This document shows positions 7,900 to 61,762 of a DNA stretch of 64,000 nucleotides, one piece after another. The stretch comes from Malacoraja senta. Lineage: Eukaryota. The notes beneath the pieces were generated by a model. The model was not told where the DNA came from and did not search any database. It worked only from the letters and a program-made list of their open reading frames with translations. The stretch is from positions 62,001 to 126,000 of the forward strand of contig JAXLNO010002112.1 of assembly GCA_038087875.1 (NCBI GenBank), written 5' to 3'. The translations under genes were made by a program, and so were the position numbers. How positions within the stretch are numbered: the stretch's first letter is position 1; each line of letters begins with the position of its first letter.

Positions 7900-8290
7900 A
7901 CTGTAATTCCTGGGTCTTTGTCCCTCGGTACAGGATTTTACCGGCATTAAAGGCTGTGGAAACGAGGCTGCGCATCGCAGTCTGAACTACTAGAAGCCGG
8001 CGCCTGCAGCTCGGCTCCCTGCACATCGACACCGAGTTACCAGCTCGGCTTTGGAGGCGGGTACACCGCATGTGGCCGTGCTTATTTCTCGCTTCAGGTT
8101 GGGGATGCGCTTGAGATCCCAGTGCTTGGCTCGCTGTCCCGAACGTTTCGCCGCCAGGTGATGTCACATGCCACGTGGATTTTGTTTTGACTCCAGCTGC
8201 AATCAACACTACAACAAAAGCGGAGGAAAGAAAGGAATCAGTTTGACCGGGCGAAAAGCCGAGATTGGTACTAGGGACCATGCCGCGGTA
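7900..8290 (+). promoter_or_regulatory. CpG-island promoter (upstream promoter of the CEMIP2-like gene)
   Basis: Sharp local CpG/GC enrichment in an AT-rich background. GC box GAGGCGGG at about 8053, adjacent E-boxes GTCACATG (8163) and CACGTG (8172), reverse CCAAT (ATTGG) at about 8263. Ends in ATG plus a splice donor. Confidence 0.7.
8280..8287 (+). CDS. CEMIP2-like: First coding exon (ATG CCG CG) of the CEMIP2-like gene
   Basis: ggaccATG Kozak at the end of the CpG island, donor CG|gtaaaa. Phase 2 joins exon 10892 in frame (M-P-R-F-K-M-Q-T-D...). Confidence 0.6.
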
Positions 8291-8907
8291 AAATACAAAT
8301 ATTTCGTCTACTATTTCTGAGCATCAATTCCAAAGTTTCATATTGTGCGTGTGTTGTGTTCCCCCATACATTGAAACCCCAAATCATTTAAAATGGAAAG
8401 ACACACTGGATTGACGATAATCTAACTTTAAATATATTTGCTTAGAGAAAAAAACGAATGAAATAATCAACTTTTAACCTTGCTTTTATTTCCATGTATT
8501 TAAATAATGTAATTAGAACTGCACGTTGTTCTTTTACTTAAACGATGAGAAATCCTTCCAACTTTAGTTGAAGTGACCTTTTTCTGCCGTCCTCTCACTT
8601 CTGTTGACTGACAGTCCAACAACTCCCACCCTCGATCGGCAGTCTCCAGTACTGTGCAACATTACTGGAAACAGTATAATTCTGCCAGGCAGGTCCTAGT
8701 GCGTGGTGATTTACACAAATAATAAATAGACGTTTGTTTCTATTGAAGAGTAAACTTAATGTCAATGATGTTTCTCTGGCCCTAATTTGCAAAGTTCAGA
8801 CACGGCTAGCCAGCTTGAAGTTCGCTGCTTGGCATGTTATAAAATTACTTTAACGGAGTATTTGGCAGGAGAATGAGAAGACGACTGAGAGAATAGTTTA
8901 TCTTCAG

Positions 8908-8973
8908 TTTTTGGATGAAAAACACAAACCATACCATTAAGAGTAACTGCCGTAGGGAATTTATTGGACCAAG
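8908..8973 (+). CDS. Candidate 66-nt in-frame cassette or alternative exon (FWMKNTNHTIKSNCRREFIGP)
   Basis: tcttcag| acceptor (weak pyrimidine tract) and consensus AAG|GTAAGT donor at 8974. Symmetric phase 2-2, no stop, internal ATG at 8915. Confidence 0.3.
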
Positions 8974-9382
8974 GTAAGTGAGATTTGTAGGTGTTGGAAA
9001 TTGGTGGGTTGACATCTGATAATTAACTATGTACAGTGCGGTGGAAAAAAACGAATGTGGTACTTTTGAAGAGCAGAGAGCTTTTCAGATGTAAATGATA
9101 TTTTGCAACTGCGAAATCTGGAGTTATAATCAGATATAAAAAATATCTATTCATTTTTAACCAAAATTTTTTAACTAATTGGCTCAATTAGTGAGGTTTG
9201 GAAAGAGATTCAAAGATTCAATTTTAAATGAATTAGTGTTTGAAAGGAATTCTTTTTTGTGCTGTTAAGTTGTTTCATTTCACTAATTGTGGCTTTTATT
9301 CCATGGAATATTGCGAAAAGTCACATATTTAGATCTTTGATTTAAGAAAATAAACTGACCTTAATTAAAAAGAGCAGCCTCC

Positions 9383-9780
9383 ATAGAGTCATAGAGTAAT
9401 ACAGTGTGGAAACAGGCCCTTTGGCCCATCTCGCTCACACCAGCCAACAATGTCCCAGCTACCCTAATCCCACTTACCTGCGCTTGATCCATACCGCTCC
9501 AAACCTGTCCTATCCATGTACCCTGTCCAACTGTTTCTTAAATGATGGGACAGTCCCAGCCTCAACTACCTCCTCTGGCAGCTTGTTCCATACACCCACC
9601 ACCCTCTGTGTGAAAAAGTTACCCCTCGGATTCCTATTAAATCTTTTCCCCATCACCTTGAACCTATGTTCTCTGGTCCTCGATTCCCCTACTCTGGGTA
9701 AAAGACTCTGTGCATATACCCAATCTATTCCTCTCATGATTTTGTATACCTCTATAAGATCTCCCCTCATCCTCCTAACA
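9383..9780 (-). mobile_element. CR1/HER1 LINE 3' end
   Basis: RRMRGDLIEVYKIMRG...FFTQRVVGVWNKLP CR1 ORF2 C-terminus and a CTCTATGA tail. Confidence 0.88.
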
Positions 9781-10159
9781 TCCTCATAACAATCAAATGT
9801 GCTTACTTGTGTGAAGACGTTGATGACCGTGGAGTTCAAGGAACACAAATTTCCTGGGCGTTCATAGTTTTAGTCACATCATTGCTGTGAATTTAGTTTG
9901 TCACGTTGCGACCAACAAGTAACAGCGAATGGAGTTCCAGAGGTCAGAAATACATATATTTATTCAGGAAGTAATTTGGAAGAAAACATACAAATCTTTC
10001 AACCTAGCCCTTTTTCTTGCTACCCACTTCTAATTTGATAGTTACTCACAATTTCTATGGACGCTAGGTTAAATGTAAATGTTTATCTAATGACTGGGTT
10101 ATGCAGCATTTCGGGTGGTATCTGTGGAGACAGAAATTTCAGGCCAAAGGACAAGAACA

Positions 10160-10458
10160 ATGGTGCAGCTGGAAGCGCTGCTGCCTCGCATCACCAGGGA
10201 CCCGGGTTCAATCCTGACCTTGGGTACTGTCTGTGTGGAGTTTGCATGTTCTCCCTGTGACTGTTTCCTCCAGGAGCTCCCATTTCATCTTGCATCCCAA
10301 AGGCGTGTGGGTATGTAGGTTAATTGGCCTCTGTAAATTCCCCTGGTGTGCAGAGTGGATGGGAAAGTGGGATAACATAGAACTAGTGTGAACGAGTAAT
10401 CAGTGGTCGGCATGGACACGGCCGAAGGGCCTGTTTCCATGCTATAACTCTAAACCAA
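10160..10458 (+). mobile_element. HE1-like V-SINE
   Basis: GGTTCAATCC B box, conserved core and CR1-like tail. Confidence 0.8.
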
Positions 10459-10891
10459 ATATTGAACACAAACAACTTCAATTTTAAGCAAATACAAGAT
10501 GTAGAAAATGAACAGGTAGAGTGATGATAATTTAAGATGGTCATTTAAGAAGACGTACGTAAACAAAAGGTTTAGATTCAAGAAATTAAAATAATCTGGT
10601 GGCAAGGAAGAGGCTTATGAAGCTTTAAATGTGATAGTGGAAAGGCTGATATATTCCATGTACAGATGTTATCCAAAGGCAGTAATTACATCTCCTATGT
10701 CCTTTCATCCGCCAATACCATCTCCACACCCAGGGCTCTCCCGCAATCATCCTTAAGACAAGGTTACAGTGATCATCAAGGACACAAGGAACTATAGATG
10801 TTGGTTTACAATGATAATTTGATGATTACTGATTGGTTTCACTGTGGTGGATTGTATGATGTTAATTTTGACTTTTTACTGTCATTTTCAG

Positions 10892-11244
10892 ATTCAAAAT
10901 GCAAACAGATGAAACCCCCAAGTTCCAATCTTCCCTCAAAGACAATTGTGACAACTGCACAGTTAAGAGGTTTTCGCAAAGTACAATACCTCAGTCCCTT
11001 CATTTATGGCCTCATCAAAAGCAGTTGCTGTTTCAAAATGTCTCGCCTGCATTGGAAGCTGCTCCCAGGCTTCTCATGCCTGAGGATCATACACTAAAGA
11101 AAAGGAGGAGAGTGTTTTCTAGCCCAGAGGTAGCAAGAGAATTTGCACTTCACCTGCTGTATTTTGCAGTTTTTGCTGTAGGTGTACTGGGTTTACTTCA
11201 CTGGCATGGCATGATACAGCTATTCCAAGGAAAAAGTTGCAAAG
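10892..11244 (+). CDS. CEMIP2-like: CEMIP2-like exon: cytoplasmic tail + type II transmembrane helix
   Basis: Acceptor ttttcag|A, donor AAAG|gtaagc, open frame. KKRRR basic cluster (11097-11111) precedes hydrophobic FALHLLYFAVFAVGVLGLLHW (11142-11204). Ends in phase 1. Confidence 0.75.
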
Positions 11245-18910: not shown

Positions 18911-19396
18911 ATGGTGATCAACAAATTCAAAGCACTCATTGGAAGTTGTCATACTTCACAACCAACTCATCTGACATATACCCACTGCACAAACGATTTG
19001 TACGGAGCACAATACCAAAGAAAGACAAACAGGAGAAAAGTTTGCTGACTATCTACCAGAGAATGACAGAAGTAAAAGAAATACTACTGCAATGCGAATC
19101 TCTTGTTAAAGTGACCAATTATGTTCTGAGAGAAGCTTTGGGGAAAACTTTGGAGTTCTACCCACTTCCAACCTGTGATCAGAGGCTGAATAATCAGATT
19201 ACCAAAGTTGATCCACTCATTCTTGTTAGGGTTAAGATAAAACCACAGTTACTTTACCAAGTCTTACACTTCCTGAAAGAGCTAGACTGGCTGGTGGATG
19301 CTCATCTAGCAAAAGCGTTCTACACTGTGAAAAAGCTAATGGTTTTTAAGCAAGAAATGATATTGGGAAAGACAAGTAAAACCAATAATGAACATG
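18911..19396 (+). CDS. CEMIP2-like: CEMIP2-like exon: 162-aa extracellular stalk with furin-like KRFVR/S site
   Basis: tgttcttcag|AT acceptor, CATG|gtatgt donor. 486 nt, stop-free, symmetric phase 1-1, so it links the TM exon (phase 1) to the G8 exon (phase 1). Confidence 0.68.
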
Positions 19397-23770: not shown

Positions 23771-23794
23771 ATGGTTGGTTACAATAGAATCACC

Positions 23795-24185: not shown

Positions 24186-26384
24186 CTACTCATTACAATG
24201 TTTTGCACTCACTGCCCCAGTATTGTTTCTTTCTTTTTCTCTTTGTCTTCATTTATCGCCATCTATCTGTTGTGGACCTTTATTGTAGGATGCAGCTTGA
24301 TAGAGGAGCTTTGTTCAAAATATGTTTGGTGTTAGGTCCATTCTCTCATATGTTTCAGTGAATAGGTCATCAACAACTTGGAGTGTGTCCTCAGAACATG
24401 CGCATACACTAGTGCTGACTGCACACAACAGCTCAACAGCTCAAATAAATTCAAGGAAAACAAGTCAAGTTTGCACAACCAGTTTTCAATGCTGGTATCA
24501 TTTTAGTGAATCTGCACTGTAAACTCTGCAAACCCAATATATCTCACTAGCCAAGATCAAGTGCAGTATTCTACTATCAAAATGCTTAGGTTTTGTCACA
24601 TTGTACCATTGTCTCATTGTCCCAGTCATGTCAAGGTGAATCCATCAAGGCAGTTCTACTGAGGCAATGTGTAATTCATGTATATCAGGAATCATATCAG
24701 TCTTAGGTGAGTCAAACACACAGAAAATGCCTCAGAGTAATTTAGTCAAAAAGATTTGGAAAAATCTTTTTGACCTCCGAAGGTAGTTTAATAAAACTCC
24801 ATGAGGCATATGTATTGAATTTCAACATCTACAAATCCACATACCTCTCAAACTGGAAATGTTCTTGATTCTTATGGGTTTACCTTTAAAGGGCTAAAGT
24901 GCCTGACATCTTAAGTGAAGGGCTTAACTTAAGGTCAGAGGAAAGGTCGAGAACTGAAAAGTCATCTATCTATTCCTACACGTGCTGCCTAACCCGCTGA
25001 GTCCTCCAGCATTTATTTTTTCCTTAAGTGAATCTTTGTTTAACATATATTTTAGTAGTGCATTCAAAGGATCAATATTAAAATCTAAATAAATCTTAAC
25101 CTTTTTATTTCAAAGTTACCTCCTTACAATTAATACCAAATGATCTTTCAGTCAGAAAAAAAATCGGTGCTCTTTATCATTTAAAAAATATCAAGTGGAA
25201 CTCCTCATTCTACCCTTTTCCGTTGAAAAAAAATGATTTCCGGAGTCTGATAGCTTAAGACTTTGATCATTTCTTGACCTTCTCCAAGGCCTCAATTTCT
25301 GTCGTCCATCAAAGTGAGTAAAATTGAGATACATTTCTAACATCTGCTGTGAGGATCTGAACAGCAAACTTCTGTCTTCAAGGTTTATTCCTCATATCAT
25401 GGCTTACACACAGCGACATTCATTGCATGGTCATAGCACCTCTGGGTTCATCATTGGCTAATCATACTGTCTGATAGAATGTCACCTGAAATTCTTAAAG
25501 TTAAATGTTTTAATTGTACGCATCCCATTCACTAAATCCATTTGTGTATGCTATTTTTCTAGATGATTTGTCAGAATGTCCCATGCTTTTCCATGTTATG
25601 TCTATCCATTTGCTTTGTTTTTATAGTCTTAAAATGGCTGAAAAGGAACAGGACCCACAGAAAGTCCTTTAAAGGTAGAGTTCGGCCAAGACCCTTACTT
25701 GGACCAGACTGTGTTATATGTTGTTAGTGCATGGCAACTCCAGTGTATAACGATCATTTCACTTGCTCAAACATCTTGGGTACAATCCAATTCTTCCCAT
25801 TTGTTTCGTGCTCCATTCTGTTGCACTGACAGGACTTGGCACTGAGTAGGTCAATGAGTTTCGTGATACTATTTATCCCGAATAAATAGATTTTGTTGGA
25901 CAAATCCTGAATAAATTATACACTAATCTCAAAGTATTGCCATTCTTGACAGAAAAATTGTTTTGAGTTGTGTTGGACATGATGTTTGATATATGAATAA
26001 TATAGATAGGACACGAGATGAAATTCATTCAGACTGGCACCAAGCCATAGGGTTCCTTTATTAATGAGAAAAAGGAGGACTTTTTTAAAATAATAAAATC
26101 ATCAAAAAGCACAAACAATAAATTATATTTAGTAGGTGGCCATTCATAGAGAATGACACACATAAATTTACTTTAAAAAGAGGAAATTCCACCCTATCAT
26201 AAGATAAGCTTGGGTGTACTGATGATGTTTAAAAGGTGATCGAAAGTTAGTAACATAAAATCACTTGAGGTAGAATACCTGTCATTTTAATGTGTGTTAC
26301 ATGGGCTGTTAAAAAAAGATGTCATGTTGAATCACTCTGTTAAAATCAAAAGAAAGATAGCCAACTGATTATTTAGTTTATGCA

Positions 26385-26560: not shown

Positions 26561-26563
26561 CAT

Positions 26564-26596
<33 letters not shown>
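26564..26596 (+). repeat. (TAAG)8 microsatellite
   Basis: Read directly from the sequence. Confidence 0.95.
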
Positions 26597-35249: not shown

Positions 35250-36060
35250 GCGAGGGGAGAGATAATGAGAAGGAGATGGGGTGAGGAGGGAAGGGCTAAA
35301 GAGGAGTGTGGGTGTGGTGCAGGTGAGGAGGAGTGAGAGGGGGCATGAGGTGAGGGTGTAATGGTGATGAAAAGGAGCGGTGTGATAAGGATGTGGAGTG
35401 GATGGGTGCGAGAGCTGTGGGGGTAAAGTGATGAGGAGGGGTGTGGTGGAGGTGAGCGGTGTGCAGGAGGTGAGGGGTGTGGAGGGAGGGTGAGAAGTGT
35501 GCCGGAGGAGAGGGGAGTGGGGGAGGTGAGGGCTGTGGTGCAGATGAGGGGTGTGAGGAGGAGGAGGTGATGGGTGTGGAGAGGAGGTGAGGTGCAGGGG
35601 TGAGGGGTGTGGATGGGGAGATGAGGAGTGGTGAGGGGTGTGGAGAGGAGGTGAGGTGCAGGGGTGTGGATGGGGAGTGTGGAGGAGGTGTGATGGGTGT
35701 GATGGATGTGAGGGGTGTGGAGAGGGAGTGAGGGGTATGGAGAGGAGGTGAGGTGCAGAGGTGAGGGGTGTGGATGGGGAGATGAGGAGTGGTGAGGGGT
35801 GTGGAGAGGAGGTGAGGTGCAGGGGTGTGGATGGGGAGTGTGGAGGAGGTGTGATGGGTGTGATGGATGTGGGGTGTGGAGAGGGAGTGAGGGGTATGGA
35901 GAGGAGGTGAGGGGTGTGGATGGGGAGATGAGGAGGTGAGGGTGTGGAGAGGGAGTGAGGGGTATGGAGAGGAGGTGAGGGGTGTGGATGGGGAGATGAG
36001 GAGGTGAGGGTGTGGAGAGGGAGTGAAGGGTATGGAGAGGGGCGTGAAGGATGTGGTGGT
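35250..36060 (+). repeat. G-rich complex minisatellite (GGAGAGGAGGTGAGGGGTGTGGATGGGGA variants)
   Basis: About 800 bp of reiterated G/A/T units, almost C-free, abutting the internal promoter. Confidence 0.9.
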
Positions 36061-36864: not shown

Positions 36865-37005
36865 TGGATTGCCCAGATAAGGCCCCATATTTATTACCCT
36901 GGAACCCTGGACATCATGAAAATAAGAAGGTTAAGATTGGACGGAGAATGTTCCTAAAACTGGAGTCTTCTGCCTCGCTACATTCCATTATTATAGAGAA
37001 CGGGG
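36865..37005 (+). CDS. CEMIP2-like: CEMIP2-like exon, start of G8 domain (VDCPDKAPYLLPWNPGH...IENG)
   Basis: ctcttttag|TG acceptor, GGGG|gtaagt donor. Homologous to the CPDQ..PWNPG/WDPG start of CEMIP/TMEM2. Confidence 0.93.
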
Positions 37006-37280: not shown

Positions 37281-37839
37281 GTAAACTCGTGTTCAACGAT
37301 GCGCCGAAATCCCCTATCGCTCTGAAAGCCCGCTATATTCTGATCAGGAACGGGGGCGAGTTGCACATCGGAGCGGAAAAATGCCCCTATATTTCCAGCG
37401 CCACTATTACTCTCTACGGAAAGTCGACAGATGCATTAAACGTGGAGCATTTTGGTCAGAAGTTCATTGGCGTGGACAAAGGTGGTGTTTTGGAATTGCA
37501 CGGAAGGAAAACCTTGTCTTGGACATTTTTAGCCCAAACTCTCTACCCCGGTGGCTTGCAGTCTGGGGCTTACCGCTTTGACAGGTACTGGGGCAGCAGG
37601 GGTATCAACATCAGGGTGATAGATGCCGGCACGGCCAAGGTGCTCGCAGCCCACCGTTTCGACACTCACCTCTGGGCGGATGAGAGCAGGCGGCTGCAGG
37701 AGTTCTTACGCCGCCAACCCAGAGGGCGAATAGTGGCCATCGCTGTCGGAGACTCGGCCGCCAGGAGACTGACGCTGTCTGCCAGGAATGACCTGAGCGA
37801 ACTGCTGGGGAGCAAAGAGGCGATGTATCTGGGCTACAG
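37281..37839 (+). CDS. CEMIP2-like: CEMIP2-like exon, G8 + first GG domain
   Basis: ttttgcag|GT, ACAG|gtgagc. Encodes GGELHIGAEKC, SRRLQEFLR and GRIVAIAVGDSAA motifs typical of TMEM2. Confidence 0.95.
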
Positions 37840-38668
37840 GTGAGCCAGCTCGGATCGTGCATGGCCGCACCGCCGCGCTCCCACTGCGTTTTGAGGAATG
37901 TGTTTACATTTTAAATCCAGTTTACTTTCAACAGACAGTAAGACGCGTCCCTGTCGTTTACTGCTTTAATTCAATTCGCGTGCTAGATTAAATCTAATCC
38001 GGTAAACGAGGCTTTCCGTTTGCTCATTTGGGGCGGCAGTTTTTACCCACGTTAATTACCCTCTTACCACTGTTTGCCTGCGTTTATAACTGTGTGACAA
38101 CAAGATGGAGGAAACCAGAGGCCGGGGCATTCCCTATTCCTCACATGCAGTCGGAAACGTTGCTTGACGTGGAAGGTATCGATTATCTTGTCAACTGGGG
38201 TGAGATTTTCAACTCGCAGGTCCTTTAGCAGATTTGGATCAATGCCAAGGGTACACATTCGCTGAAGTATATTTTAATGATTGCAATTGGAACCACCATG
38301 GACAGCTCCCCGGGTCCTTTCTCGGGCGACTGGTCAGATTGGTTGCAAAGTGAGAGTAAAACGCAAAGTGCTGGAGCTACTCAGCGGGTCAGATAACATT
38401 TGTGGAGGGAATGGACAGGAGATGTTTCCTATGGGGACCCTTCCTCGGTTTCCTCCTCCCTCCACCAGCACAATAAGTTTTGCTCAAGATTCCAGCATAT
38501 GCGGTTACCTGTGTCTCTAAAAAAAAAGACCATACTTGAAACCCATAATGTGTATGTTTATATAGTTCAAATTATGTATTCATTTGTTTCATTCAAGCAT
38601 ATTTGCCATTGTAAATCAATCACAGTGGCAGACAATTTCATTATGATCTTTGCCAATCTTGACTTTAG

Positions 38669-38832
38669 GCAACCATGGGCTGCGATTGGAGTTCTTGGTG
38701 AATTGTTTGCTATGGAAGACAAACAACTGTATCAGCCTAATGGGTCAACTGGTATGGCTATAGTAAGAAGAGACTTTCAGACATATGATGGGATTCATTT
38801 CACAGTCACTGCTTTCAGTGAGTGGGTGAGAG
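38669..38832 (+). CDS. CEMIP2-like: CEMIP2-like exon (RQPWAAIG...FSEWVRG)
   Basis: ctttag|G, AGAG|gtaagt; phases 2-1 consistent with neighbours. Confidence 0.93.
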
Positions 38833-40957
38833 GTAAGTCTAATCAGCAGTTTTGTGTTTTTGAGGTTTACATTAGGTCTTTTTTAGGGTCACTACTATAG
38901 TCTGCTAAGAACCATAGACGCATGTAAGCGGAAGGCCATACGATTATAAGACATGGAAGCAGAATTAGGCCATTTGCCCTGTCGAGTTTGCTGAGCCATT
39001 CGATCATAACTGATCTATGTTTCCCTCTCAACCCCCATCTCCTGCCTTCTCCCCATCACCGTTGACACCCTTACTAATCAAAAATCTATCAATTTCCACT
39101 TTAAAAAAATATCTATTGTACAGGTATACCTGATTCTCAATTCTGCCTTTTCTCCCTTCACTGATTAAGTAAAAACATATTTTCTTTGTAGAAGAACACA
39201 AGCATTTATGTAAACAATTGAGAAACGTAATTGAAGATATTCAAAGCCAGGAATAATTGGAATTTATAAAAATAACGAAGGTTGAGGAAAAATATCAAAA
39301 AGGGGGTGGCTTGCTGGGTGTGGTGGATGGGCTGATGGCATCATGCTGTATTTCTTTGATTATAACTATAAGAGTAGAGAGGTTAAAGTTTGGTTATGTA
39401 GAGTATTGGCGAGACTACATCTGGGTACTATGTGCCATATATGTCTCACTTATTTAAGGAAGGATCTATGTTGGAAACAATTCCAAGAAGGTTTACTTGA
39501 AGGATTCCCAGCATTGGTGGGTTGTCTTGTGAGGAAAGTTGGACAAACTAGGCTTGAATCTGCTGGAGAGTAGTAGACTGGGAGGTGACACCACTGGTGC
39601 ATAAGATGACGGAGCGAATATGGTGAAGATGTTTCTGCAGTTGTTATCATTGGGATTTTTGGCAATGTCCTCCACGGTGTAGACAATGCGGGGGGGGGGG
39701 GGGGGGGGGGGATGGTTTGCTGTATCTGTCTTGTTTTCTGACATTAATTTCCCAGCCACATTCTCCAAAGGTACTGTGATGACCTAAACCACATCTTTTA
39801 AAAATATAATCTCCATAGAAAGTTAGTTTTAACATTGTGCGTTTCCCAATAACTCATTTTTGTTCCCTATCTTATGAGAACTTACACCACTGATTACTGA
39901 AAAATTCCAAGTGTAAGAATAGATTGAAAACCAGTTGTTGCACAGAAAACAGATGTAATAAATGATACTTTTTTTCTTGGTTGAATGGATATAACTTTTC
40001 AATTATCCCAGGGATATGCTCTTGGTCCTACGTTAGTCACTATTTATGTTAATGACCTAGAGGCGGGGGTCGGATTTAAGGTATCAAAGTTTGCCATTAA
40101 GACAAAAATAGATCGAAGGGCATCTTGTGATTTGCCTACTTTGGAATTTAGAAGAATGAGGACTGATCCTTATTAAACATAAGATTGGAAGGAGGCGTGA
40201 TATAGAAACACAGAAAATAGGTGCAGGAGTAGGCTCTTCAGCCCATCGAGCCAGCACCACCATTCAAATTGATCATGGCTGATCATCCAAAAGCAGTACC
40301 CTGTTCCTACTTACCCCCCCATATCCCTTGATTCCTTTAGCCCTAAGAGCTAAATCTAACTCTCTTGAAAACATCCAGTGAATTGGTCTCCACGGCCTTC
40401 TGTGACAGAGTGACAGGGTAGATGTCAGTGTGATCACTTGTTGGAGAATAGCTTCAAAATAAAGAGTGAGTCATTTAGAACAGATTTGCATTTAAATTTC
40501 TTCTCTGTGAGAGTGATAAATCTCTGAGATTCACTGACCCAGAGAGTTTTAGCAGCTAGCTCATGACAAGTAGTTCACTTGAAGAGGTAAAGTTTTGGAG
40601 AATTTGAGGGCTCTGGCTATCTGGCACAGAGGAGTTGAGATTTGGTTTTTGGATCGAACATTCTGCATGACATTTCTGAAGCAGTTGTCTACAACTCAAT
40701 AGTTTTTTTCTATTATAAACTAAAAATTCAACACTGAACAGCACACATGTGGTTATAGTGAAATATATCATATGCAGGCTGCTATTGATAACTGGGCTTA
40801 AATTCACATGGATAGTGTTATTCAAACATGTTGGTTGACAGTGTTATTGAACTAGATAAGCTTGGGGAGATAAGAATGAGAACTGACTTGTCACAAGTGA
40901 ATCGGACAGTCATATAGTGCAGGAAAGGAAAGGAAACAAAAAAAGATCATTGTCCAG

Positions 40958-41245
40958 GGTGGCACAGTGGTTACAGCACCATGGACCCAGGTTTAATCCT
41001 GACTATGGGTTGCTGTCTGTACAGATATTGTACATTCTTTCTATGACCGTATGTGTTTTCTCCAGGTGCCTCCCATACTCTAATGTCGTACAGGTTTGTA
41101 GGTTAACTGGCTTTTGGAAATTGTCCTTAGTGTGCAGGATAATCTTAGTGTGTACAGGATGATCGCTGGTAGGCGCAGACTCGGTGGGCTGAAGGGCCTG
41201 TTTCAACGCTGTATCTCTAAAGTCTAAAGCAAAGTCTAAAGTCTA
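40958..41245 (+). mobile_element. HE1-like V-SINE
   Basis: Same organisation as 1775-2066, with a (CTAAAGT)n tail. Confidence 0.8.
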
Positions 41246-41373
41246 ATCATATTGCTGTACCATTCTCCATCTTTAAAGGAAAGCAATTGCATAACGTATT
41301 TTTTCTTTCTAATATTTATTTTCTTAATGTATGCCTTTTGTGCTTTTATAACATTGTGTTATTTATTCCACAG

Positions 41374-41559
41374 GTGTCCCTCACTGTGGCTTTCGTGTGG
41401 ATGTGTCAAATGGTGTTATTCTTAATTTAATGGATGATGCCTCAAGCTGGTTGCCTGGTGATCAAATAGTCATTGCAAGTACTGATTATTCTATGCATCA
41501 GGCAGAAGAATTTGATCTCCTTCCCTGTCCTGGGTGTAATATTTATCAGATTAAAATTG
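41374..41559 (+). CDS. CEMIP2-like: CEMIP2-like exon (GVPHCGFRVDV...ASTDYSMHQAEEF...QIKI)
   Basis: ccacag|GT, ATTG|gtaaga; conserved STDYSMxQAEEF motif. Confidence 0.94.
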
Positions 41560-44454: not shown

Positions 44455-44624
44455 GCAAGCCACGTTATCTCCATATGGGTGAAATTGTAGATGGAATAGA
44501 CATGAGGGCTGAAGTTGGACTTCTAAGTAGAAACATCCTCATAAAAGGAGAAATGGAGGACTCCTGTTACGGACAAAACTTCTGCCACTTCTTTAGCTAC
44601 GATACATTTGGTGGACAGATAAAG
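44455..44624 (+). CDS. CEMIP2-like: CEMIP2-like exon (GKPRYLHMGE...DMRAEVGLLSRN...DTFGGQIK)
   Basis: catag|GC, AAG|gtaagc; family motif DMRAEVG. Confidence 0.94.
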
Positions 44625-45340: not shown

Positions 45341-45550
45341 ATCCTAAGAAACTTTGCCTCGGTTCACTTGTCTGGCGTAGAATTGACGAACATGGGCCAG
45401 CAGATACTTGGGAGTTACCCAGTACACTTACACCTGGCTGGAGATGTGGATCGGAAAGGCGGCTACAATCCGCCAACTTATGTGGACAACCTATCCATAC
45501 ATCACTGTTTCTCGCGATGTGTGGCTATACATAGAACAAATGGTTTGCTG
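45341..45550 (+). CDS. CEMIP2-like: CEMIP2-like exon (ILRNFASVHL...SIHHCFSRC...NGLL)
   Basis: ggcag|ATC, CTG|gtacgt; 210 nt, phase 0-0. Confidence 0.94.
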
Positions 45551-47216: not shown

Positions 47217-47422
47217 GTCAAAGATACAATAGGGTATGACACGCTTGGACATTGTTTCTTCCTGGAGGATGGTGTGGAGCAGAGAAACATACTGTATCAC
47301 AACCTGGGTCTCCTTACCAAGCCAGGCACCATCCTCCCTTCTGACCGCAATGAAATTATGTGCATTTCAATCCGTAATCAAGTTTGTGGAAATTATATTC
47401 CCATACCAAGTAATGACTGCAT
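47217..47422 (+). CDS. CEMIP2-like: CEMIP2-like exon, PbH1 region (VKDTIGYDTLGHCFFLEDGVEQRN...NDCM)
   Basis: ctatag|GTC, GCAT|gtaagt. Translated by hand; this frame is not in the ORF track. Confidence 0.94.
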
Positions 47423-51540: not shown

Positions 51541-51610
51541 GGCTGTCACAACATTTTGGATATCCAATCCTAACAACCACCTCATCAACAATGCAGCAGC
51601 TGGTGCCCAG
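51541..51610 (+). CDS. CEMIP2-like: CEMIP2-like exon (AVTTFWISNPNNHLINNAAAGAQ)
   Basis: tttgcag|G, CAG|gtaagg. Confidence 0.94.
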
Positions 51611-55562: not shown

Positions 55563-55808
55563 ATAGACTAATGCTGGCAGTCAGCAAGAAAGGAAATGGA
55601 GAAAGAGACAGGTAAAAGCTATAAACTGGAGGCCAGAGCAGTTGCAGAGAACTTAAACCCAATGGAAAATATTGGAAATTGGGTAACGCCTCTGGAGAGT
55701 GAAAAACTTGGTTAATATTGCAGATGATTTAGCCAATTCTCATACAGGGAAAGCTTGAAATTGTAAAATTTTATCTGGGGTCCCAAAGTCTGCAAAATGT
55801 TTAGGTGG

Positions 55809-55970
55809 AAGATAGACACAAAAAGCTCAAGAAGACTCAGTCTGAAGAAGTGATCGACCCAAAACGTCACCCATTCCTTCTCTCCAGAGATGCTGCCTGT
55901 CCCGCTGAGTTACTCCAGCTTTTTGTGTCTATTTTCGGTTTAAACCAGCACCTTCAGTTTCTTCTTACAC
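55809..55970 (+). mobile_element. Penelope pLTR element with a short inverted 5' piece
   Basis: CTGAAGA core at about 55842. 14-bp TSD AAATGTTTAGGTGG at 55795-55808 and 55971-55984. Confidence 0.82.
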
Positions 55971-56633
55971 AAATGTTTAGGTGGGACTGGTGTTGTTCTG
56001 CTGGCCCTTTTGAATACATCTACACAAGTGTAACTTGTTGGTGATGAAACTTTGATCTCAAATGGTCATTTTTACCTCTCCATAGATACTGCCTGACTTG
56101 CTGAGCATATCTGGTATTTTTTTAAATTTAAGAATTACAATGGTTTAGCTCACCACAACATTCTCAAGAGAAATTATGGAACAACAATAAATGGAATTGC
56201 AAATAATACCTTGATTCCATAGAAATACATGTTTATGAATGTGTCTATTCAGTGTGTGGCAAGTAGGCAGTTACTTTGTATGAAAGATTACTGCTGCAAA
56301 ATACTTTGCATAAGTCCGGGAACAGTCCTTGCATGTTTAATAGATGCAAGGGCATTTTATTCTGCATCTATTTCAGATGTTCAGCATTTGCTGATTTTTC
56401 AATTTTAATTTCTGCATACATTTGGTCCAACCTACAAAAAGCAATAATTAACCTCAAGCCCTATTTTAAGCTGGTTCTCCTCTGGGTTGTATGAATTCAT
56501 TTAAATGTATAGGTTAGTTTAGTGTTTGAATATTTCTACTGAAGCACAATTATGCTTAGAGAGTGTTTTGTTTAAAAAATATATGTTGTTTTTCCTGGTT
56601 TTAACGTTTCTTGTTTAATCTCTTCCTTTCCAG

Positions 56634-56762
56634 GATGTGGGGATATGGTATATTTTCCACCGTAACCCTACTGGAGAATCTGTGGGTCAATTTCCAGATG
56701 GCCAGTCAGAGTTTACCCCCTTGGGAATATTTTACAACAACAGGGTACATTCTAACTTCAAG
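56634..56762 (+). CDS. CEMIP2-like: CEMIP2-like exon (DVGIWYIFH...TPLGIFYNNRVHSNFK)
   Basis: ctttccag|GAT, AAG|gtgtgt; 129 nt. Confidence 0.94.
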
Positions 56763-56919
56763 GTGTGTATACTCTGCTACAATAAGAGCATGTAACAATG
56801 ATTTATTTTGCACGTATTTTTTATTTCAAAATAAGATTTCCAATTATTGTTGTGAACTATTAAAAAATATAGCCTGTAGGCACACTAGTGTGTTCTATGC
56901 CTAGGTTTAGATTTCAACC

Positions 56920-57150
56920 CAATTTTTTTAGATTAGTTTGGAAATGCAACATGGAAACAGGCCCCTTCAGTCCACCGAGTCCACTCCAGCTATCGATCAC
57001 CTGTACACTACGTCATCCCACTTTTGCATCTTACACACTAGGGGCAATTTACAGAAGGCAATACACCTACAAACCTGCATGCCTTTGGAAAGTGGGAGGA
57101 AACCGGAGCACCTGGAGAAACCCCACGCAATCACCGGGAAAACATACTAA
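56920..57150 (-). mobile_element. HE1-like V-SINE
   Basis: Reverse complement of the HE1 core and tail. Confidence 0.75.
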
Positions 57151-57282
57151 CTGGATATCTTGCTGAGAGATGAGTCACGAACATTAATGTCAAGGGTAAT
57201 GTCAGATCTCAAAAGTTCCGTGCAGTGGACGCTCCCTACATTATTGTCCATTCCTCACTTACAGTTGGTATACTCTTGGGTG

Positions 57283-57403
57283 GAGAAGGGTCTCGACCTG
57301 AAACGTCACCCATTCCTTCTCTCCAGAGATGCTGCCTGTCCTGCTGAGTTACTCCAGCATATTATGTCTACCTTCGATTAAACTAGTATCTGCAGTTCTT
57401 TCC
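57283..57403 (+). mobile_element. 5'-truncated Penelope pLTR
   Basis: Starts inside the hammerhead core. 12-bp TSD TACTCTTGGGTG at 57271-57282 and 57404-57415. Confidence 0.85.
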
Positions 57404-58886
57404 TACTCTTGGGTGTTTAGACCGTTGATTGTCTTATTAACAGTGTGTGTTATCGGTGTTGGATAGCCTATGCTCTTCCTCCTGTTTTTTGGGTCAAGTG
57501 TTTTGTGTTCTGAGCCACCTTATATTTAAAGAGTTGCTTTTTAAAATCACAGTGGTGTTTCTAATCCCAAAACACCGTACAGTCGAGGTTGGTTAACTCT
57601 TGGATCCTCAATTGATTCTTACAAGCCTGCCCTGGTACGTCTTGGTAGAAAAGCCCAAAGTCTTTCAATAGGTGCTAATTAAAGCTCTTGTTGTTTGTGG
57701 GGTCATCAGATTGTACGTAAGGTGCTGTCTGAATAGTCATCTTTTGTGCCGTACTTGGAAATTCCCAAGTTATTTGTTTCTTGTGGCTGTATTGCTTTGT
57801 GCCTGGTGGTTTTAGGTAATGCTGAATCCAACTGACATCGCCTTTGTGGTTTCCAGTTTGGAGAGTGATGTAATCAAACTGCTGCCTATGACAAGATCAT
57901 GGGGAATTCCTTAAAGCCTTGTGATTGTCTCTGACAAAATAGGTTGTTGATTTTGACAAGTCTGCGCTTCAAGCAATTTGTCAGGAGGATTCTGTTGGAT
58001 TGATCTTTCCCTACTCCCTCCTTGTAAATTCTGTCTTGCTACCAGATTGTCTCCAGCATTGAGGTTATCCAGGAAGATTGCTTTGTCTCATATTTTCTAA
58101 CAGCCAGGGCGTTTTCATGATTTCTTGAGCAGAAGTCCTCTTTGGGTTTGCCCGTAGTTCCCAATGTGGGGGGGACATCCGTGCTGATGACCCTAGAGTA
58201 TTAGTTCCATGATTGAGCTAGTGGGAGAGGCACGCGGCATTCACATACTCTACAGGGGTAATCTTTGAGATACCAACCTGACACATTTTCCACTAGCATT
58301 GGTAGCATTCCATTAACTTCCCTAATTACTTGCTTTCTAGCCCATTGAGAATCATGCATAAACACGCCGATCTCGGCATTTCAGAACGCGACTGTCTCTC
58401 ACTATTCAGATAAAATTCTCCTCCTTTATTTTTCTTGCCAAAATGGTCAGTTTCCCATTTTCCCACATTATAATCCACTTGGTAGAACACCAAATCCATC
58501 TCTAACCTTTCTCTGTCTGCTTCACGACATCTCTGTGCCATCATCAAATTGAGCTGTTTTAGCTTTTGGTATCGTGATCCAAGTCATTTACTGTGTTTGC
58601 ATAGTAAACAAGAATTATGGCACCAACACCAATTGCGTTGGCACCTTGCTCATTGCATCTTGCCAATCAGAAAAAGCCTAGTGTGCCTAGTGTTTTCTGC
58701 TAGTCAACTCACTTTTGCTGTATATTATCTTTTTGAAATACCCAATCCTCCAGAAAAGAAGAGGGAGTTTCTGTAGTTGTTAATTCTACTCAGTGTTACT
58801 AATGTGTGTTTTATTATAGTGCCAGGCTGGAATGTTGGGATTATTATCTCCAGTGATTTATTGATTTCTGGTCTCCTTTCCCGCAG

Positions 58887-58972
58887 GCTGGACTTTTCAT
58901 TGACAGTGGAGTGAAGACAACCAAATGCAATGACAATGATCCCAGGGAAATTCTTGCACTGGACTTTGCAAG
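58887..58972 (+). CDS. CEMIP2-like: CEMIP2-like exon (AGLFIDSGVKTT...DPREILALDFAR)
   Basis: cccgcag|GCT, AAG|gtatag. Confidence 0.93.
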
Positions 58973-59839
58973 GTATAGCGGAATTAAATATTTCAGAAGA
59001 TTGATTTACTTCTGTGTAAAGGTCTTTCCATAATAAACACTGGGGCTAGTTTATTGAACTAGTAATGCTTGCTAGCATGATATCACCCTGGGAAATTTGA
59101 TATAAACTCTATGCAAATGAATCCAACTTATAAGCATTAATTTTTCCAATGCTTGAAGCATTTTTAAATTGAACGAAACAGATTCCATGTAAGCATTATT
59201 TCGGGAGAAATTATGCAAGTTGTGTTCACTGGTGAGTTTTGATGCTTATTTGCGGCCTCTTCCTTGTGGGAACTAAATAGCTGATTACTTCCCCTGCAAG
59301 ATCTGGCTATTTGTTAGGAAATGATTTCATTCAGCCAATATTTTTTCGTGCTTGTTTTGATAACATACAGCTTCCTTACTCTGTCAAAGCAGGGTCAAAT
59401 GCTGGAGATTGGTGTTTGTTTTTGGCATTGGGTATTATTGTTTGATACCACCAGTTGCTAGTAAGAGGGAGGTAAGAGTGTGGAATTAAGGGAGAAGGTC
59501 AGCGTTGGGGAATCTCTCAGTGGGTTGACGCTTTAAAAAAATAGGAAGGGGGAAAGGAGAACTCAATAGCTGGGACGTTGTCAACTGGGAGTCAGTAATG
59601 AAGATTGGACCAAGAAGCCATTAGATATATTGAGGTGCATGGGGCAGAATTAACTGTTGGGTATTTTGAAGATTGGGATTGGAAAGAGTGTAGAGACAGA
59701 ATGATAAAGAGTTGTTTCTCACTACTGGCATTGACAACATAGTAATGAAGCTGGGTTAGGTCAGTTGTCAAGGGAATGAGATAAGCGAGGTTCTTGACTG
59801 ATGACCCAATAGAGAGCTTGATAAAATTATCACTTGGTG

Positions 59840-60070
59840 TAATGGAGACTTGCAGCACAAAAACAGGCCCATCAACCTAACTCGTTCATGCCAATCGGGA
59901 TGCCCCATCTAAGCAAGTCCAATTTACCCTTGTTTGGTTTATAGCCCTCTAAATCCTTCCTATCCATGTACCTATCCAAATGTCTTTTAAATGTTATTGT
60001 ACCTAGTTCAACTACTTTCTCTGGTAGCTTGTTCCATGTACTAGCCACCCTGTTTGAAAAGGTCATTCCT
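59840..60070 (-). mobile_element. CR1/HER1 LINE 3' end
   Basis: RVASTWNKLPEKVVE..TFKRHLDRYMD. Confidence 0.85.
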
Positions 60071-60374
60071 CGGGGCTGATACCAAGTAAACAAAAAATAT
60101 TCTGCTTTAAAATTCACAGTTTCTTCAGAATATCTTGCAACAATACGAGTAAAACTGCATTGTTCTAGCGATAAGTGCCAACATACAGTGGAGTACAGAT
60201 AGATATATCTGCTGCTGTGAAGCTTAAATAATAAATAATGAATATTGTGGGTTCACATGTAATCAATAATGTGTATAAAATATTGAATCATTCTCTTACC
60301 ATTCTGGCATATATTGCCAGCAACAGCCATTGGATCTTCTAATAACATGCTCCATGTGCAGCAAGAAGAGTCTA

Positions 60375-60925
60375 AAGGGCCTGTCCCACGGGCATGCGAC
60401 TCCATGCGGCAAGCGCGACCTAACCGGAAGCGGGGGCCGCGCGGAGGTCGCAGGGCCGGTCCCACTTCGATCGCCGGAGCCGTATGGAGTTGTGCGGAGC
60501 TGGTCCACACATGGCGCGGGGCTCCGAAAAACTGACACTGTTCAAAAATTCCTCGCGGCAACGGCCTGCCGCCCCGCAGCCGCATCGAGGCCGTGCGCGC
60601 CGCATCGACGGCCGTGCGCACCGCCTCGAAGCCGTATGCAGCCGCCTTAAGGCCGTGCGCACCGCCTCGACGTCGTACGCAGCCGCATCGAGGCCGTATG
60701 CACCGCCTCAACGGCCGTGCGCACCACCCCGACACCGTACGCACCGTCTTGACGTCACTCGACCTCCGCGGGGCCCCCGCTTCCGGTTTGGTAGCGCTTG
60801 CTGCATGCAGCCGCATGCTGGTGGGACAGGCCCTGTCCGGGGATCACTCGACCTCCGTGCGGCCCCCCGCTTCCGGTTAGGTCGCGCTTGCCGCATGGAG
60901 TCGCATGCCCGTGGGACAGGCCCTT
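60375..60925. mobile_element. Young CpG-rich MITE (non-autonomous DNA transposon)
   Basis: About 76-bp near-perfect TIRs starting AAGGGCCTGTCCCAC, flanked by TA. Internal ~21-bp tandem repeats and a duplicated right end at 60755-60833. Confidence 0.88.
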
Positions 60926-61300
60926 TATTTACCATTCAACTGTTGTTTTTATTATTTATAATCTCCAATTTTCTTGATGTTTACACTTTGCTGCAAACAT
61001 ATTTGGCATAATATGCAATGATTGCTTCATTTTATTTTGGCTGAAATCATGTAACAAGAAAAGATTTGTCATTTAATGATTTATTTATATGGCTTTAAAT
61101 ATCTTATGCTCAACTGATAATGAAGGATTAATAATTAATTAGTGTTTAAAACTGTTGTATTTAGCCTTCTGTTCCCGCTGAATCTTGGTTTCTGATGTCT
61201 ATTAATTCCTTGGGCCTCAGTGTCTGCCTTCTGTTTTCAATAGTTTATGTCTCAAGAACCGTGACAGATCTGTAACTTCTGCTCTGTATCTTTGACATAG

Positions 61301-61432
61301 GTTTCGCCCTCATCAAAATGCTGACCCAAGGCAGCCACGTGTTCCTGCTGTTATTGATGGTCTTATAGCTTTTAAAAACAATGAGCAAGGAGCTTGGGCT
61401 AGAGGGGGAGACATTATATTCCGCAACTCTGG
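61301..61432 (+). CDS. CEMIP2-like: CEMIP2-like exon (FRPHQNADP...AFKNNEQGAWARGGDIIFRNSG)
   Basis: gacatag|G, TGG|gtaagt. Confidence 0.94.
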
Positions 61433-61726
61433 GTAAGTTCTGTTATATGCTGGAACATGTCTTTGCAACAGAAAATATCTTTGATATATATAGAAGCATT
61501 GAATGAATTACTAGAGATGGTGTATCTCAGTCACTGAGCTAGAGGTTCCACTGCTGATGCTGCATGCACGGTACTGAAGATATAATGCAGAGGTAATTAC
61601 TACGGCTATACAAAACAATTAGCTGATCACATATGTTTCACAAAGGATTTGATATTATGTTGCTTGCTGTATAATGTAAGATGCATGAAATTCTGGAATG
61701 TGACCCCATTCTCTTTGCTTCTGTAG

Positions 61727-61762
61727 GTTCTCCGATAATGGGATAGGTCTGACTCTAGCAAG
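61727..61762 (+). CDS. CEMIP2-like: CEMIP2-like 36-nt exon (FSDNGIGLTLA); gene continues beyond the window
   Basis: ctgtag|G, AAG|gtaatc; matches the family FADNGIGLTxAS motif. Confidence 0.9.

What the first reader, a model, noticed from the sequence alone, without database searches (positions are those of the whole stretch)
8280..61762. A TMEM2-architecture hyaluronidase at the ABHD17C (CEMIP) locus: candidate third CEMIP/TMEM2 family member
Established: in human, ABHD17C neighbours CEMIP (secreted) and ABHD17B neighbours CEMIP2/TMEM2 (type II membrane). Seen: the upstream gene is ABHD17C-type, yet the hyaluronidase has an N-terminal TM. It joins SEWVRG directly to VPHCGFRVDV (38832 to 41374), so it lacks the CEMIP-specific insert, and it carries TMEM2-type motifs (SRRLQEFLR, GRIVAIAVGDSAA, TPLGIFYNNRVHSNFK). 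It also has CEMIP-type residues (PWNPGH, TLxPGG, RxWGxRG, HLAGDVD..GGYxPPTY, LPSDR, GLTLA). Inference: this is a distinct paralog, or an ancestral-like ohnolog of TMEM2 retained in the CEMIP paralogon and absent from human.
Basis: partly seen in the sequence, partly recalled or inferred. Interest (0 to 1): 0.78.

Follow-up and report, generated by a model that had tools for sequence, protein, structure and literature searches.

The report
Third CEMIP-family gene, CEMIP2-like
The window holds the first two thirds of a skate gene for a membrane-anchored relative of the hyaluronan-degrading proteins CEMIP and TMEM2; it belongs to a real third branch of that family, kept from sharks to birds but lost in mammals, already labelled "CEMIP2-like" in databases though I found no paper that describes it.

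Summary
All cited motifs are present. Sixteen coding exons with canonical AG/GT sites (8915-61762, + strand) give a stop-free 1011-aa N-terminal part. It has a cytoplasmic tail, a membrane anchor, a 180-aa stalk, G8, GG/ILEI and the start of the CEMIP beta-helix. The gene runs off the window.

The 38832>41374 junction is seen in RNA contigs of three related species. The CEMIP-only WxxW domain maps exactly to that junction.

The window is colinear (93% nt) with Leucoraja erinacea, where the order is ABHD17 > this gene > CEMIP > MESD. Duck has the same ABHD17 > CEMIP2-like > CEMIP order.

An ML tree gives three gnathostome clades. CEMIP2-like (100/100, window inside the skates) is sister to CEMIP2 (100/99). 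AU tests reject grouping it with CEMIP (p=7e-7) and nesting CEMIP2 inside it (p=4e-5).

The "mosaic" residues are ancestral states that CEMIP2 lost, not gene conversion.

It is not new to databases: NCBI annotates it in over 100 species. Reviews from 2024-25 still count two members. The scan noted the same gene twice before on other pieces of this genome.

Whether skates also keep CEMIP2 is unresolved. Function is untested.

The parts
3144..3362 (+). Last coding exon of the upstream ABHD17 gene (C-type), with stop codon
   Evidence: ORF and translation. Identical to the Leucoraja ABHD17 upstream of CEMIP2-like. 68/72 identical to the duck CEMIP-linked copy. Differs from the Lates CEMIP2-linked copy at 7 diagnostic sites. 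Weak alpha/beta-hydrolase Pfam hits.
8168..8287 (+). Alternative 5' exon region. ATG 8168 is the Leucoraja X1-type start, with donor lost and frame shifted here. Usage not verified.
   Evidence: tblastn of P0425/P0416 aa 1-17. DNA comparison with L003.
8915..8973 (+). First coding exon (isoform X2 type), aa 1-20
   Evidence: 100% match to Amblyraja P0281 aa 1-20. GT donor, in-frame junction to exon 2.
10892..11244 (+). Exon 2: cytoplasmic tail and type II membrane anchor (hydrophobic aa 104-122 at about 11142-11198, preceded by KKRRR)
   Evidence: A hydrophobic segment in the same place across the CEMIP2-like clade.
18911..19396 (+). Exon 3: 162-aa stalk exon. Its core is a clade-specific helical domain with two invariant cysteines.
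   Evidence: Alignment A1 of 26 orthologues. AlphaFold model, core pLDDT 70-91. No fold match.
25627..25674 (+). Exon 4: 16-aa basic mini-exon (contains RTHRK), present only in some elasmobranchs
   Evidence: Distribution seen in alignment A1.
36865..37005 (+). Exon 5: start of the ectodomain body (CPD...PWNPGH, G8 N-terminal part)
   Evidence: Joint 37005>37281 in RNA contigs.
37281..37839 (+). Exon 6: G8 C-terminal part and GG/ILEI lectin-like domain 1, with R265/D273/D286 equivalents
   Evidence: Pfam G8 3e-24 and ILEI 6e-18. 8c6i alignment. Residue census.
38669..38832 (+). Exon 7: end of GG region, ends SEWVRG
   Evidence: joints 37839>38669 and 38832>41374.
41374..41559 (+). Exon 8: begins VPHCGF. 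The CEMIP-only WxxW domain would sit at its 5' boundary.
44455..44624 (+). Exon 9
45341..45550 (+). Exon 10: CEMIP beta-helix
   Evidence: Pfam CEMIP_beta-hel 7e-27..
47217..47422 (+). Exon 11: CEMIP beta-helix
   Evidence: Pfam 1e-21..
51541..51610 (+). Exon 12
56634..56762 (+). Exon 13: CEMIP beta-helix
   Evidence: Pfam 6e-10..
58887..58972 (+). Exon 14
61301..61432 (+). Exon 15
61727..61762 (+). Exon 16 (..SDNGIGLTLA), the last one in the window. The gene continues beyond 64000.
   Evidence: No further exon found in 61763-64000.

Best explanation
The window carries the 5' two thirds of a skate orthologue of the gene that NCBI calls 'cell surface hyaluronidase-like / CEMIP2-like'. This is the third gnathostome member of the CEMIP/TMEM2 family.

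Shown: it is an intact, spliced, expressed gene under purifying selection. It lies between ABHD17C and CEMIP. Its clade is sister to CEMIP2 (TMEM2) and is as old as jawed vertebrates.

Inferred history: a tandem pair (membrane type + secreted type) stood downstream of an ABHD17 gene before the block was duplicated. The duplication was probably the second vertebrate genome duplication, which also made ABHD17B and ABHD17C. One block kept both genes (CEMIP2-like + CEMIP). The other kept only the membrane type (CEMIP2). Mammals and most teleosts later lost CEMIP2-like.

Inferred mechanism (about 45%): a type II cell-surface protein whose beta-helix ectodomain is held on a 180-aa stalk. It binds hyaluronan through lectin-like domain 1, where the Arg/Asp/Asp triad is intact, and takes part in its depolymerisation at the cell surface. 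Whether it is itself catalytic is as open as it is for TMEM2.
For: Gene model: 16 exons, all AG/GT, no stops. Splice joints are seen in RNA contigs of three related organisms.

Selection: dN/dS 0.21 against Leucoraja over 991 codons, with every exon the same length.

Orthology: 95-98% aa identity to Leucoraja, Amblyraja and Rhinoraja 'cell surface hyaluronidase-like'. 93% nt colinearity with Leucoraja locus L003.

Synteny: ABHD17 > CEMIP2-like > CEMIP > MESD in Leucoraja. ABHD17 > CEMIP2-like > CEMIP in duck. ABHD17 > CEMIP2 in Lates. Chicken order MESDC2, CEMIP, ABHD17C.

Tree: CEMIP2-like 100/100, CEMIP2 100/100, the two together 100/99, CEMIP with cyclostome sequences 100/100. AU tests reject CEMIP2-like + CEMIP (p=6.8e-7) and CEMIP2 + bony-vertebrate CEMIP2-like (p=4e-5). 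Turtle CEMIP2 scores 2313 bits to human TMEM2 8c6i, turtle CEMIP2-like 1660 and skate 1637.

Architecture: G8, ILEI, CEMIP beta-helix, CEMIP_X, second ILEI. No WxxW.

Functional residues: R265, D273 and D286 equivalents are present in 127-128 of 129 CEMIP2-like sequences. Their role is described in PMC10276149 and PMC10206443.
Against: Only about 64% of the gene is in the window.

The downstream CEMIP and MESD are read from Leucoraja, not from this genome.

No chondrichthyan CEMIP2 was recovered. So it is not shown that the skate has all three genes.

The root rests on long outgroup branches (amphioxus 0.74, Lingula stem 1.1).

ABHD17 was typed from 72 residues plus synteny, and ABHD17A was not compared.

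There is no functional assay for any CEMIP2-like protein. Soluble human TMEM2 showed no hyaluronidase activity (PMC10206443), and human TMEM2 is reported as non-catalytic (PMC10276149).

Positions 248 and 303, needed in mouse TMEM2, are Tyr and Arg here. They vary across all three clades, so they say little.
Confidence: 0.85

Rival explanations
1. It is simply the skate's CEMIP2 (TMEM2) orthologue, the only membrane-type member in this genome, and the '-like' label and odd residues reflect lineage divergence.
For: No chondrichthyan CEMIP2 turned up in the listed hits. The architecture is TMEM2-like: a membrane anchor and no WxxW domain.
Against: The clade holding the window also holds CEMIP2-like genes of species that have a separate CEMIP2: sturgeon, gar, Amia, eels, coelacanth and turtles. 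CEMIP2 lies outside the whole clade at 100/100, and forcing CEMIP2 to join the bony-vertebrate members is rejected (p=4e-5). The gene sits beside ABHD17C, CEMIP and MESD, not in the ABHD17B block.
Confidence: 0.03
2. It is a tandem duplicate of the neighbouring CEMIP, or a CEMIP / CEMIP2 mosaic made by gene conversion between neighbours. That would explain the CEMIP-type residues.
For: It is the direct upstream neighbour of CEMIP on the same strand. It shares TLxPGG, W[GS]xRG, LPSDR, GLTLA and GGYxPPTY with CEMIP but not with CEMIP2.
Against: The AU test rejects a CEMIP2-like + CEMIP clade (p=6.8e-7). Exon by exon, identity runs CEMIP2-like > CEMIP2 > CEMIP from exon 5 on. CEMIP2 is level with CEMIP2-like in exon 10 and higher in the 28-aa exon 14, and CEMIP is level only in the 12-aa exon 16; CEMIP is the closest in no exon. 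The shared motifs also occur in cyclostome, amphioxus and Lingula proteins, so they are ancestral states lost on the CEMIP2 stem.
Confidence: 0.02
3. It is a decaying relic (pseudogene) of a paralogue on its way out, as happened in mammals.
For: One alternative first exon, the Leucoraja X1 type, has lost its donor and is frame-shifted in the window.
Against: Sixteen exons have no stop or frameshift. dN/dS is 0.21. Spliced transcripts of 4-5 kb are present in related skates. Another first exon is intact (8915-8973). Branch lengths in the clade are similar to those of CEMIP2.
Confidence: 0.02
4. Same gene and same history, but the protein is a non-catalytic hyaluronan-binding lectin or regulator, as proposed for human TMEM2. 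It would present or sequester hyaluronan, or tune CEMIP and HAS2, rather than cut it.
For: No active site can be assigned in the TMEM2 structure, and soluble TMEM2 was inactive (PMC10206443). Human TMEM2 regulates HYBID and HAS2 without catalysis (PMC10276149). The conserved triad lies in the lectin-like domain, not in a catalytic cleft.
Against: Mouse TMEM2 and CEMIP do lower hyaluronan size in cells (PMC10276149). The beta-helix is the most conserved part of CEMIP2-like, at 73-88% identity across jawed vertebrates in exons 9-13. That fits more than a lectin role.
Confidence: 0.4

Closest known systems
CEMIP2 / TMEM2 (cell surface hyaluronidase; human ectodomain structure 8c6i)
   Same: Sister clade (100/99). 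Both are type II membrane proteins with the same G8-GG-beta-helix-CEMIP_X-GG body and no WxxW domain. About 62-63% identity over the body. The R265/D273/D286 triad is kept. Both have an ABHD17 gene directly upstream.
   Different: Different chromosomal block: ABHD17C/CEMIP/MESD rather than ABHD17B. A roughly 180-aa stalk with a conserved two-cysteine helical domain lies between membrane and body, where CEMIP2 has about 12 residues. It keeps ancestral residues that CEMIP2 changed: TLxPGG, the extra residue in W[GS]xRG, LPSDR and GLTLA. It was not seen in mammals or in teleosts other than eels.
CEMIP / KIAA1199 / HYBID
   Same: Same family and domain set, and the direct downstream neighbour on the same strand. 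Shares several ancestral motifs.
   Different: CEMIP is secreted (signal peptide) and carries a Mucin2_WxxW domain exactly where the window joins exons 7 and 8. Only 54-55% identical. Grouping with it is rejected.
NCBI gene models 'cell surface hyaluronidase-like' (Amblyraja radiata XP_032906153/6, Leucoraja erinacea XP_055517167) and 'CEMIP2-like' (Rhinoraja longicauda and many birds, reptiles, amphibians, fishes)
   Same: Direct orthologues: 95-98% identical, same exons, same neighbours.
   Different: The window is from another skate species or assembly, since none is 100% identical. The alternative first exon differs.

Membership tests
CEMIP/TMEM2 family (G8 + GG + CEMIP beta-helix proteins) | G8 domain followed by a GG/ILEI lectin-like domain | tested here: met
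   Window exon 6: Pfam G8 3e-24 and ILEI 5.6e-18. Alignment to 8c6i, E=4e-57.
CEMIP/TMEM2 family (G8 + GG + CEMIP beta-helix proteins) | CEMIP-type right-handed beta-helix | tested here: met
   Window exons 10, 11 and 13 hit PF24606 at 7e-27, 1e-21 and 6e-10.
CEMIP/TMEM2 family (G8 + GG + CEMIP beta-helix proteins) | C-terminal CEMIP_X domain and second GG domain | not testable with these tools
   These lie beyond the window end. They are present in the 98%-identical Leucoraja orthologue P0425.
CEMIP/TMEM2 family (G8 + GG + CEMIP beta-helix proteins) | Lectin-domain residues needed for hyaluronan degradation (mouse TMEM2 R265, D273, D286; CEMIP R187) | tested here: met
   R, D and D are present in the window and in 127-128 of 129 CEMIP2-like sequences. 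Residue roles from PMC10276149 and PMC10206443.
CEMIP/TMEM2 family (G8 + GG + CEMIP beta-helix proteins) | Hyaluronan depolymerising activity | not testable with these tools
CEMIP2-like clade (third paralogue) | Falls in the clade in an ML tree, apart from CEMIP2 and CEMIP | tested here: met
   Clade 100/100, window inside the skates 100/100. AU tests.
CEMIP2-like clade (third paralogue) | Position between ABHD17C and CEMIP, same strand | tested here: met
   The ABHD17 C-type exon lies upstream in the window. The CEMIP side is read from the colinear Leucoraja locus and from duck. It was not seen in this genome itself.
CEMIP2-like clade (third paralogue) | Membrane anchor plus roughly 180-aa stalk with the conserved C...C helical core | tested here: met
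   Exons 2 and 3. Alignment A1 has both cysteines invariant in 26 species. Stalk lengths 154-202 aa wherever both landmarks were found and the anchor is plausible.
CEMIP2 (TMEM2) orthologue group | Groups with proteins orthologous to human TMEM2 | tested here: not met
   Sister to that group, not a member. 1637 bits to 8c6i against 2313 for turtle CEMIP2.
CEMIP (KIAA1199) orthologue group | Signal peptide and Mucin2_WxxW domain between GG1 and the beta-helix | tested here: not met
   A membrane anchor instead of a signal peptide. Exons 7 and 8 join with no insert, confirmed by RNA. WxxW is found only in CEMIP.

The most novel reading that the evidence does not exclude
CEMIP2-like is a working cell-surface hyaluronan depolymerase (or an obligate partner of the adjacent CEMIP) whose clade-specific disulfide-bonded stalk domain controls its reach, oligomerisation or shedding. 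In cartilaginous fishes it may be the only membrane-type member. Its loss on the mammalian stem would then mark a re-division of hyaluronan turnover between CEMIP and TMEM2. Chicken, Xenopus and axolotl studies of hyaluronan breakdown would have been missing one enzyme.
Probability: 0.2. Interest if true: 0.65.

Novelty: new member of a known kind. Interest (0 to 1): 0.5.

Why it matters
Reviews of hyaluronan degradation still list two G8-domain proteins, CEMIP and TMEM2 (PMC11275217, PMC12423501). Whether TMEM2 is catalytic is disputed.

A third, ancient and selectively maintained paralogue exists in chicken, Xenopus, axolotl, sharks and skates. Knock-outs and expression studies in those animals may therefore be buffered by an unstudied gene.

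It also offers a natural comparison for finding what makes these proteins active. It keeps ancestral residues that TMEM2 lost, shares the membrane anchor with TMEM2, and adds a stalk domain with no structural relative found.

The tandem ABHD17C > CEMIP2-like > CEMIP arrangement gives a clean account of how the family arose. The gene itself is already in public annotation, so the gain is recognition and framing, not discovery of an unknown sequence.

Tried and rejected
- Skate or shark CEMIP2. Three capped homologue searches list only the best 120 hits, and none was a chondrichthyan CEMIP2. The unnamed Logan CEMIP2 hits all fall among teleosts. This shows neither presence nor absence.
- ABHD17 typing with the protein atlas on the 72-aa exon gave only generic bacterial hydrolase clusters. 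Typing therefore rests on synteny-labelled exons. ABHD17A could not be compared.
- Sturgeon CEMIP2 locus: no called gene within 10 kb on either side, so it gave no information on ABHD17B.
- Amblyraja isoform X2 is not on record for locus look-up. The Leucoraja X1 isoform was used instead.
- Fold search of the stalk model against PDB and AlphaFold clusters found nothing (best E=1 and 0.1, TM below 0.3).
- Positions 248 and 303, the mouse-versus-human TMEM2 activity switch, vary in all clades. I dropped them as a predictor of activity.
- Long intronic ORFs have no Pfam domain. The 350-aa minus-strand ORFs are an artefact of a G-rich minisatellite.
- Literature searches for CEMIP3, TMEM2L, CEMIP2-like, synteny and gene duplication found no description of the paralogue. 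'TMEM2L' in papers is an alias of CEMIP.

Full report
WHAT IS IN THE WINDOW

A 184-aa exon (37281-37839) aligns to the solved human TMEM2 ectodomain 8c6i at E=4e-57. An exhaustive profile-free search with it returned full-length family members. I used those as guides for spliced alignment.

Skate orthologues then fixed the 5' exons. The model has 16 coding exons between 8915 and 61762. Every one has an AG acceptor and a GT donor. They translate to 1011 residues without a stop.

No further exon lies between 61763 and 64000. The window therefore ends in intron 16 and holds about 64% of a roughly 1585-aa protein.

Window exons hit Pfam G8, ILEI and CEMIP_beta-hel directly.

Residues 104-122, encoded at about 11142-11198, are hydrophobic and preceded by KKRRR. 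That indicates a type II anchor.

Logan RNA contigs of three related organisms lie on exons 5-8. They carry the joints 37005>37281, 37839>38669 and 38832>41374, all GT..AG.

WHOSE GENE IT IS

The spliced protein is 97.6% identical to Leucoraja erinacea, 96.8% to Amblyraja radiata and 95.2% to Rhinoraja longicauda 'cell surface hyaluronidase-like / CEMIP2-like'.

The whole window is colinear with the Leucoraja locus at 93% nucleotide identity, introns included. It is therefore the orthologous locus of another skate species or assembly.

Against Leucoraja, all 15 compared exons have identical length, and dN/dS is 0.21 over 991 codons.

NEIGHBOURS

In Leucoraja the order on one strand is ABHD17 (286 aa), this gene (1590 aa, 70 kb), then CEMIP (1364 aa). 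MESD follows on the other strand.

In the duck Anas acuta the order is ABHD17 (311 aa), CEMIP2-like (1497 aa), then a 1360-aa CEMIP-type gene.

In the teleost Lates calcarifer, an ABHD17 gene (288 aa) lies directly upstream of CEMIP2, and no family member follows within 10 kb.

Published gene lists give MESDC2, CEMIP, ABHD17C, ARNT2 on chicken chromosome 10. They place ABHD17C 175 kb from CEMIP in cattle.

The ABHD17 exon in the window (3144-3362) is identical to the Leucoraja one. It matches the duck CEMIP-linked copy at all seven positions where that copy differs from the Lates CEMIP2-linked copy. The upstream gene is therefore C-type. ABHD17A could not be compared.

PHYLOGENY

I built a 62-row tree (LG+C20+F+G4 PMSF, 1334 columns) from these sequences:
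- the window protein;
- 24 CEMIP2-like sequences;
- 13 CEMIP2 sequences;
- 17 CEMIP sequences;
- 4 cyclostome sequences;
- amphioxus and two Lingula sequences as outgroup.

Support values (bootstrap/SH-aLRT):
- CEMIP2-like: 100/100, with the window inside the skates at 100/100;
- CEMIP2: 100/100;
- CEMIP2-like + CEMIP2: 100/99;
- CEMIP + cyclostome sequences: 100/100.

Inside each clade the branching follows the species tree.

AU tests reject a CEMIP2-like + CEMIP clade (p=6.8e-7). They also reject a clade of CEMIP2 with the bony-vertebrate CEMIP2-like genes (p=4e-5).

The CEMIP2 clade is anchored to human TMEM2. Turtle CEMIP2 scores 2313 bits to 8c6i, turtle CEMIP2-like 1660 and skate CEMIP2-like 1637.

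Latimeria, sturgeon, gar and eels carry all three genes. Amia and turtles were found with CEMIP2-like and CEMIP2.

No mammal, and no teleost other than eels, appeared among the CEMIP2-like hits. A mammalian copy would be expected to rank above the fish sequences that were listed.

THE 'MOSAIC'

TLxPGG, W[GS]xRG, LPSDR, GLTLA and GGYxPPTY are common in CEMIP2-like and CEMIP, and in the cyclostome and invertebrate proteins. They are absent from 113-114 of 114 CEMIP2 sequences. TPLGIFYNNRVHSNFK is shared by CEMIP2-like and CEMIP2 only.

Exon by exon, identity runs CEMIP2-like > CEMIP2 > CEMIP from exon 5 on. CEMIP2 is level in exon 10 and higher in the 28-aa exon 14, and CEMIP is level only in the 12-aa exon 16; CEMIP is the closest in no exon.

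The mosaic is therefore retention of ancestral residues that the CEMIP2 stem changed. It is not gene conversion from the neighbour.

The 'CEMIP-specific insert' is the Mucin2_WxxW domain. It is found only in CEMIP. In the alignment it falls exactly at the window's exon 7/8 boundary, and it is present in the cyclostome proteins too.

Outgroup, cyclostome and CEMIP proteins start with a signal peptide directly before the CPD...W.PG motif. CEMIP2 has a tail, an anchor and about 12 linker residues. So the anchor is a shared derived trait of CEMIP2 and CEMIP2-like, not an ancestral one.

WHAT SETS THE PARALOGUE APART

Between anchor and body lies a stalk of about 154-202 residues. Most of it is encoded by the single exon 18911-19396.

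Its core of about 100 residues is alignable from skates to birds and has two invariant cysteines. AlphaFold predicts a small helical domain with core pLDDT of 70-91. Neither PDB nor the AlphaFold clusters hold a similar fold.

A 16-aa basic mini-exon (25627-25674, containing RTHRK) occurs only in some elasmobranchs.

LIKELY FUNCTION

The three lectin-domain residues whose mutation abolishes mouse TMEM2 activity (R265, D273, D286) are kept in the window and throughout the clade.

Positions 248 and 303 separate active mouse from inactive human TMEM2. Here they are Tyr and Arg. They vary in all three clades and are not informative.

The beta-helix exons are the most conserved part.

The best reading is a cell-surface hyaluronan-binding protein that takes part in depolymerisation. 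The alternative of a non-catalytic lectin or regulator, as argued for human TMEM2 (PMC10276149, PMC10206443), is nearly as likely.

The word 'inactive' in some NCBI names is inherited from the current name of human CEMIP2. It is not evidence about this gene.

HISTORY (INFERRED)

CEMIP split from the membrane type before the CEMIP2 / CEMIP2-like split. CEMIP and CEMIP2-like are tandem, and both blocks start with an ABHD17 gene.

The simplest account has four steps:
1. A tandem pair stood downstream of ABHD17.
2. The block was duplicated.
3. The CEMIP-type copy was lost from the ABHD17B block.
4. CEMIP2-like was later lost in mammals and most teleosts.

That the block duplication was the second vertebrate genome duplication rests on my own knowledge that human 15q25 and 9q21 are paralogous regions. 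I did not test it here.

NOVELTY

The gene is annotated in well over a hundred species. It appears under 'transmembrane protein 2-like' in chicken and Xenopus expression lists; I did not check that those LOC genes are this paralogue.

No paper in the searchable library describes it as a family member. Reviews from 2024 and 2025 count two.

The scan itself noted the same gene twice before on other pieces of this genome.

OPEN POINTS

- Whether skates also have CEMIP2.
- The 3' third of the gene and the downstream gene in this genome.
- Which first exon is used here.
- Any function.

Noticed in passing
window 35436-36056: A G-rich minisatellite in intron 4 (units of about 20, 57-68 and 161 bases). 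It explains the two overlapping 330-350-aa 'ORFs' on the minus strand and the drop to 80% identity with Leucoraja at this spot.
   Followed up: partly
window 8168-8290 versus L003 10890-11010: The alternative first coding exon used by Leucoraja isoform X1 (ATG at 8168) has a 1-nt insertion and a GT>GA change at its donor in the window. A downstream ATG (8280) followed by a strong donor (8288) would give a 3-residue start in the right phase. Which start is used here was not verified.
   Followed up: partly
window 38249-38570, 38893-39214, 40181-40502, 40986-41307: Interspersed repeats in introns 6 and 7 reach assembler depths of thousands to hundreds of thousands in RNA contigs of all four related runs. 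These are very abundant transcribed repeat families and are unrelated to the gene's exons.
   Followed up: no
window 25627-25674: The 16-aa basic mini-exon (VLKWLKRNRTHRKSFK) is present in skates, rays, Heptranchias and Pristiophorus. It is absent from carpet, cat and basking sharks and from all bony vertebrates. It is skipped in some annotated isoforms. It carries a minimal R-x-x-R motif.
   Followed up: partly
other pieces of the same genome (earlier notes s1-206899, s1-206947): Two earlier notes describe the same kind of gene, one of them also beside ABHD17C, on 'another piece' of this genome. This could be a duplicated haplotype piece in the assembly or a real second copy. I could not check which.
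   Followed up: no
L001 (duck), L003 (Leucoraja), Aldrovandia locus tags AAFF_G00067580/67590: CEMIP2-like and CEMIP are direct head-to-tail neighbours, 5.6 kb apart in Leucoraja and 7.6 kb in duck. This raises the possibility of shared regulation.
   Followed up: partly
P0353 (Lingula) in the 62-row alignment: One of the three outgroup rows also fills the columns of the CEMIP WxxW insert. I did not identify which one. Lingula P0353 is the likely one, because it is the longest outgroup (1375 aa) and carries an extra PF08240 hit. I did not establish whether that insert is homologous to the WxxW domain.
   Followed up: no
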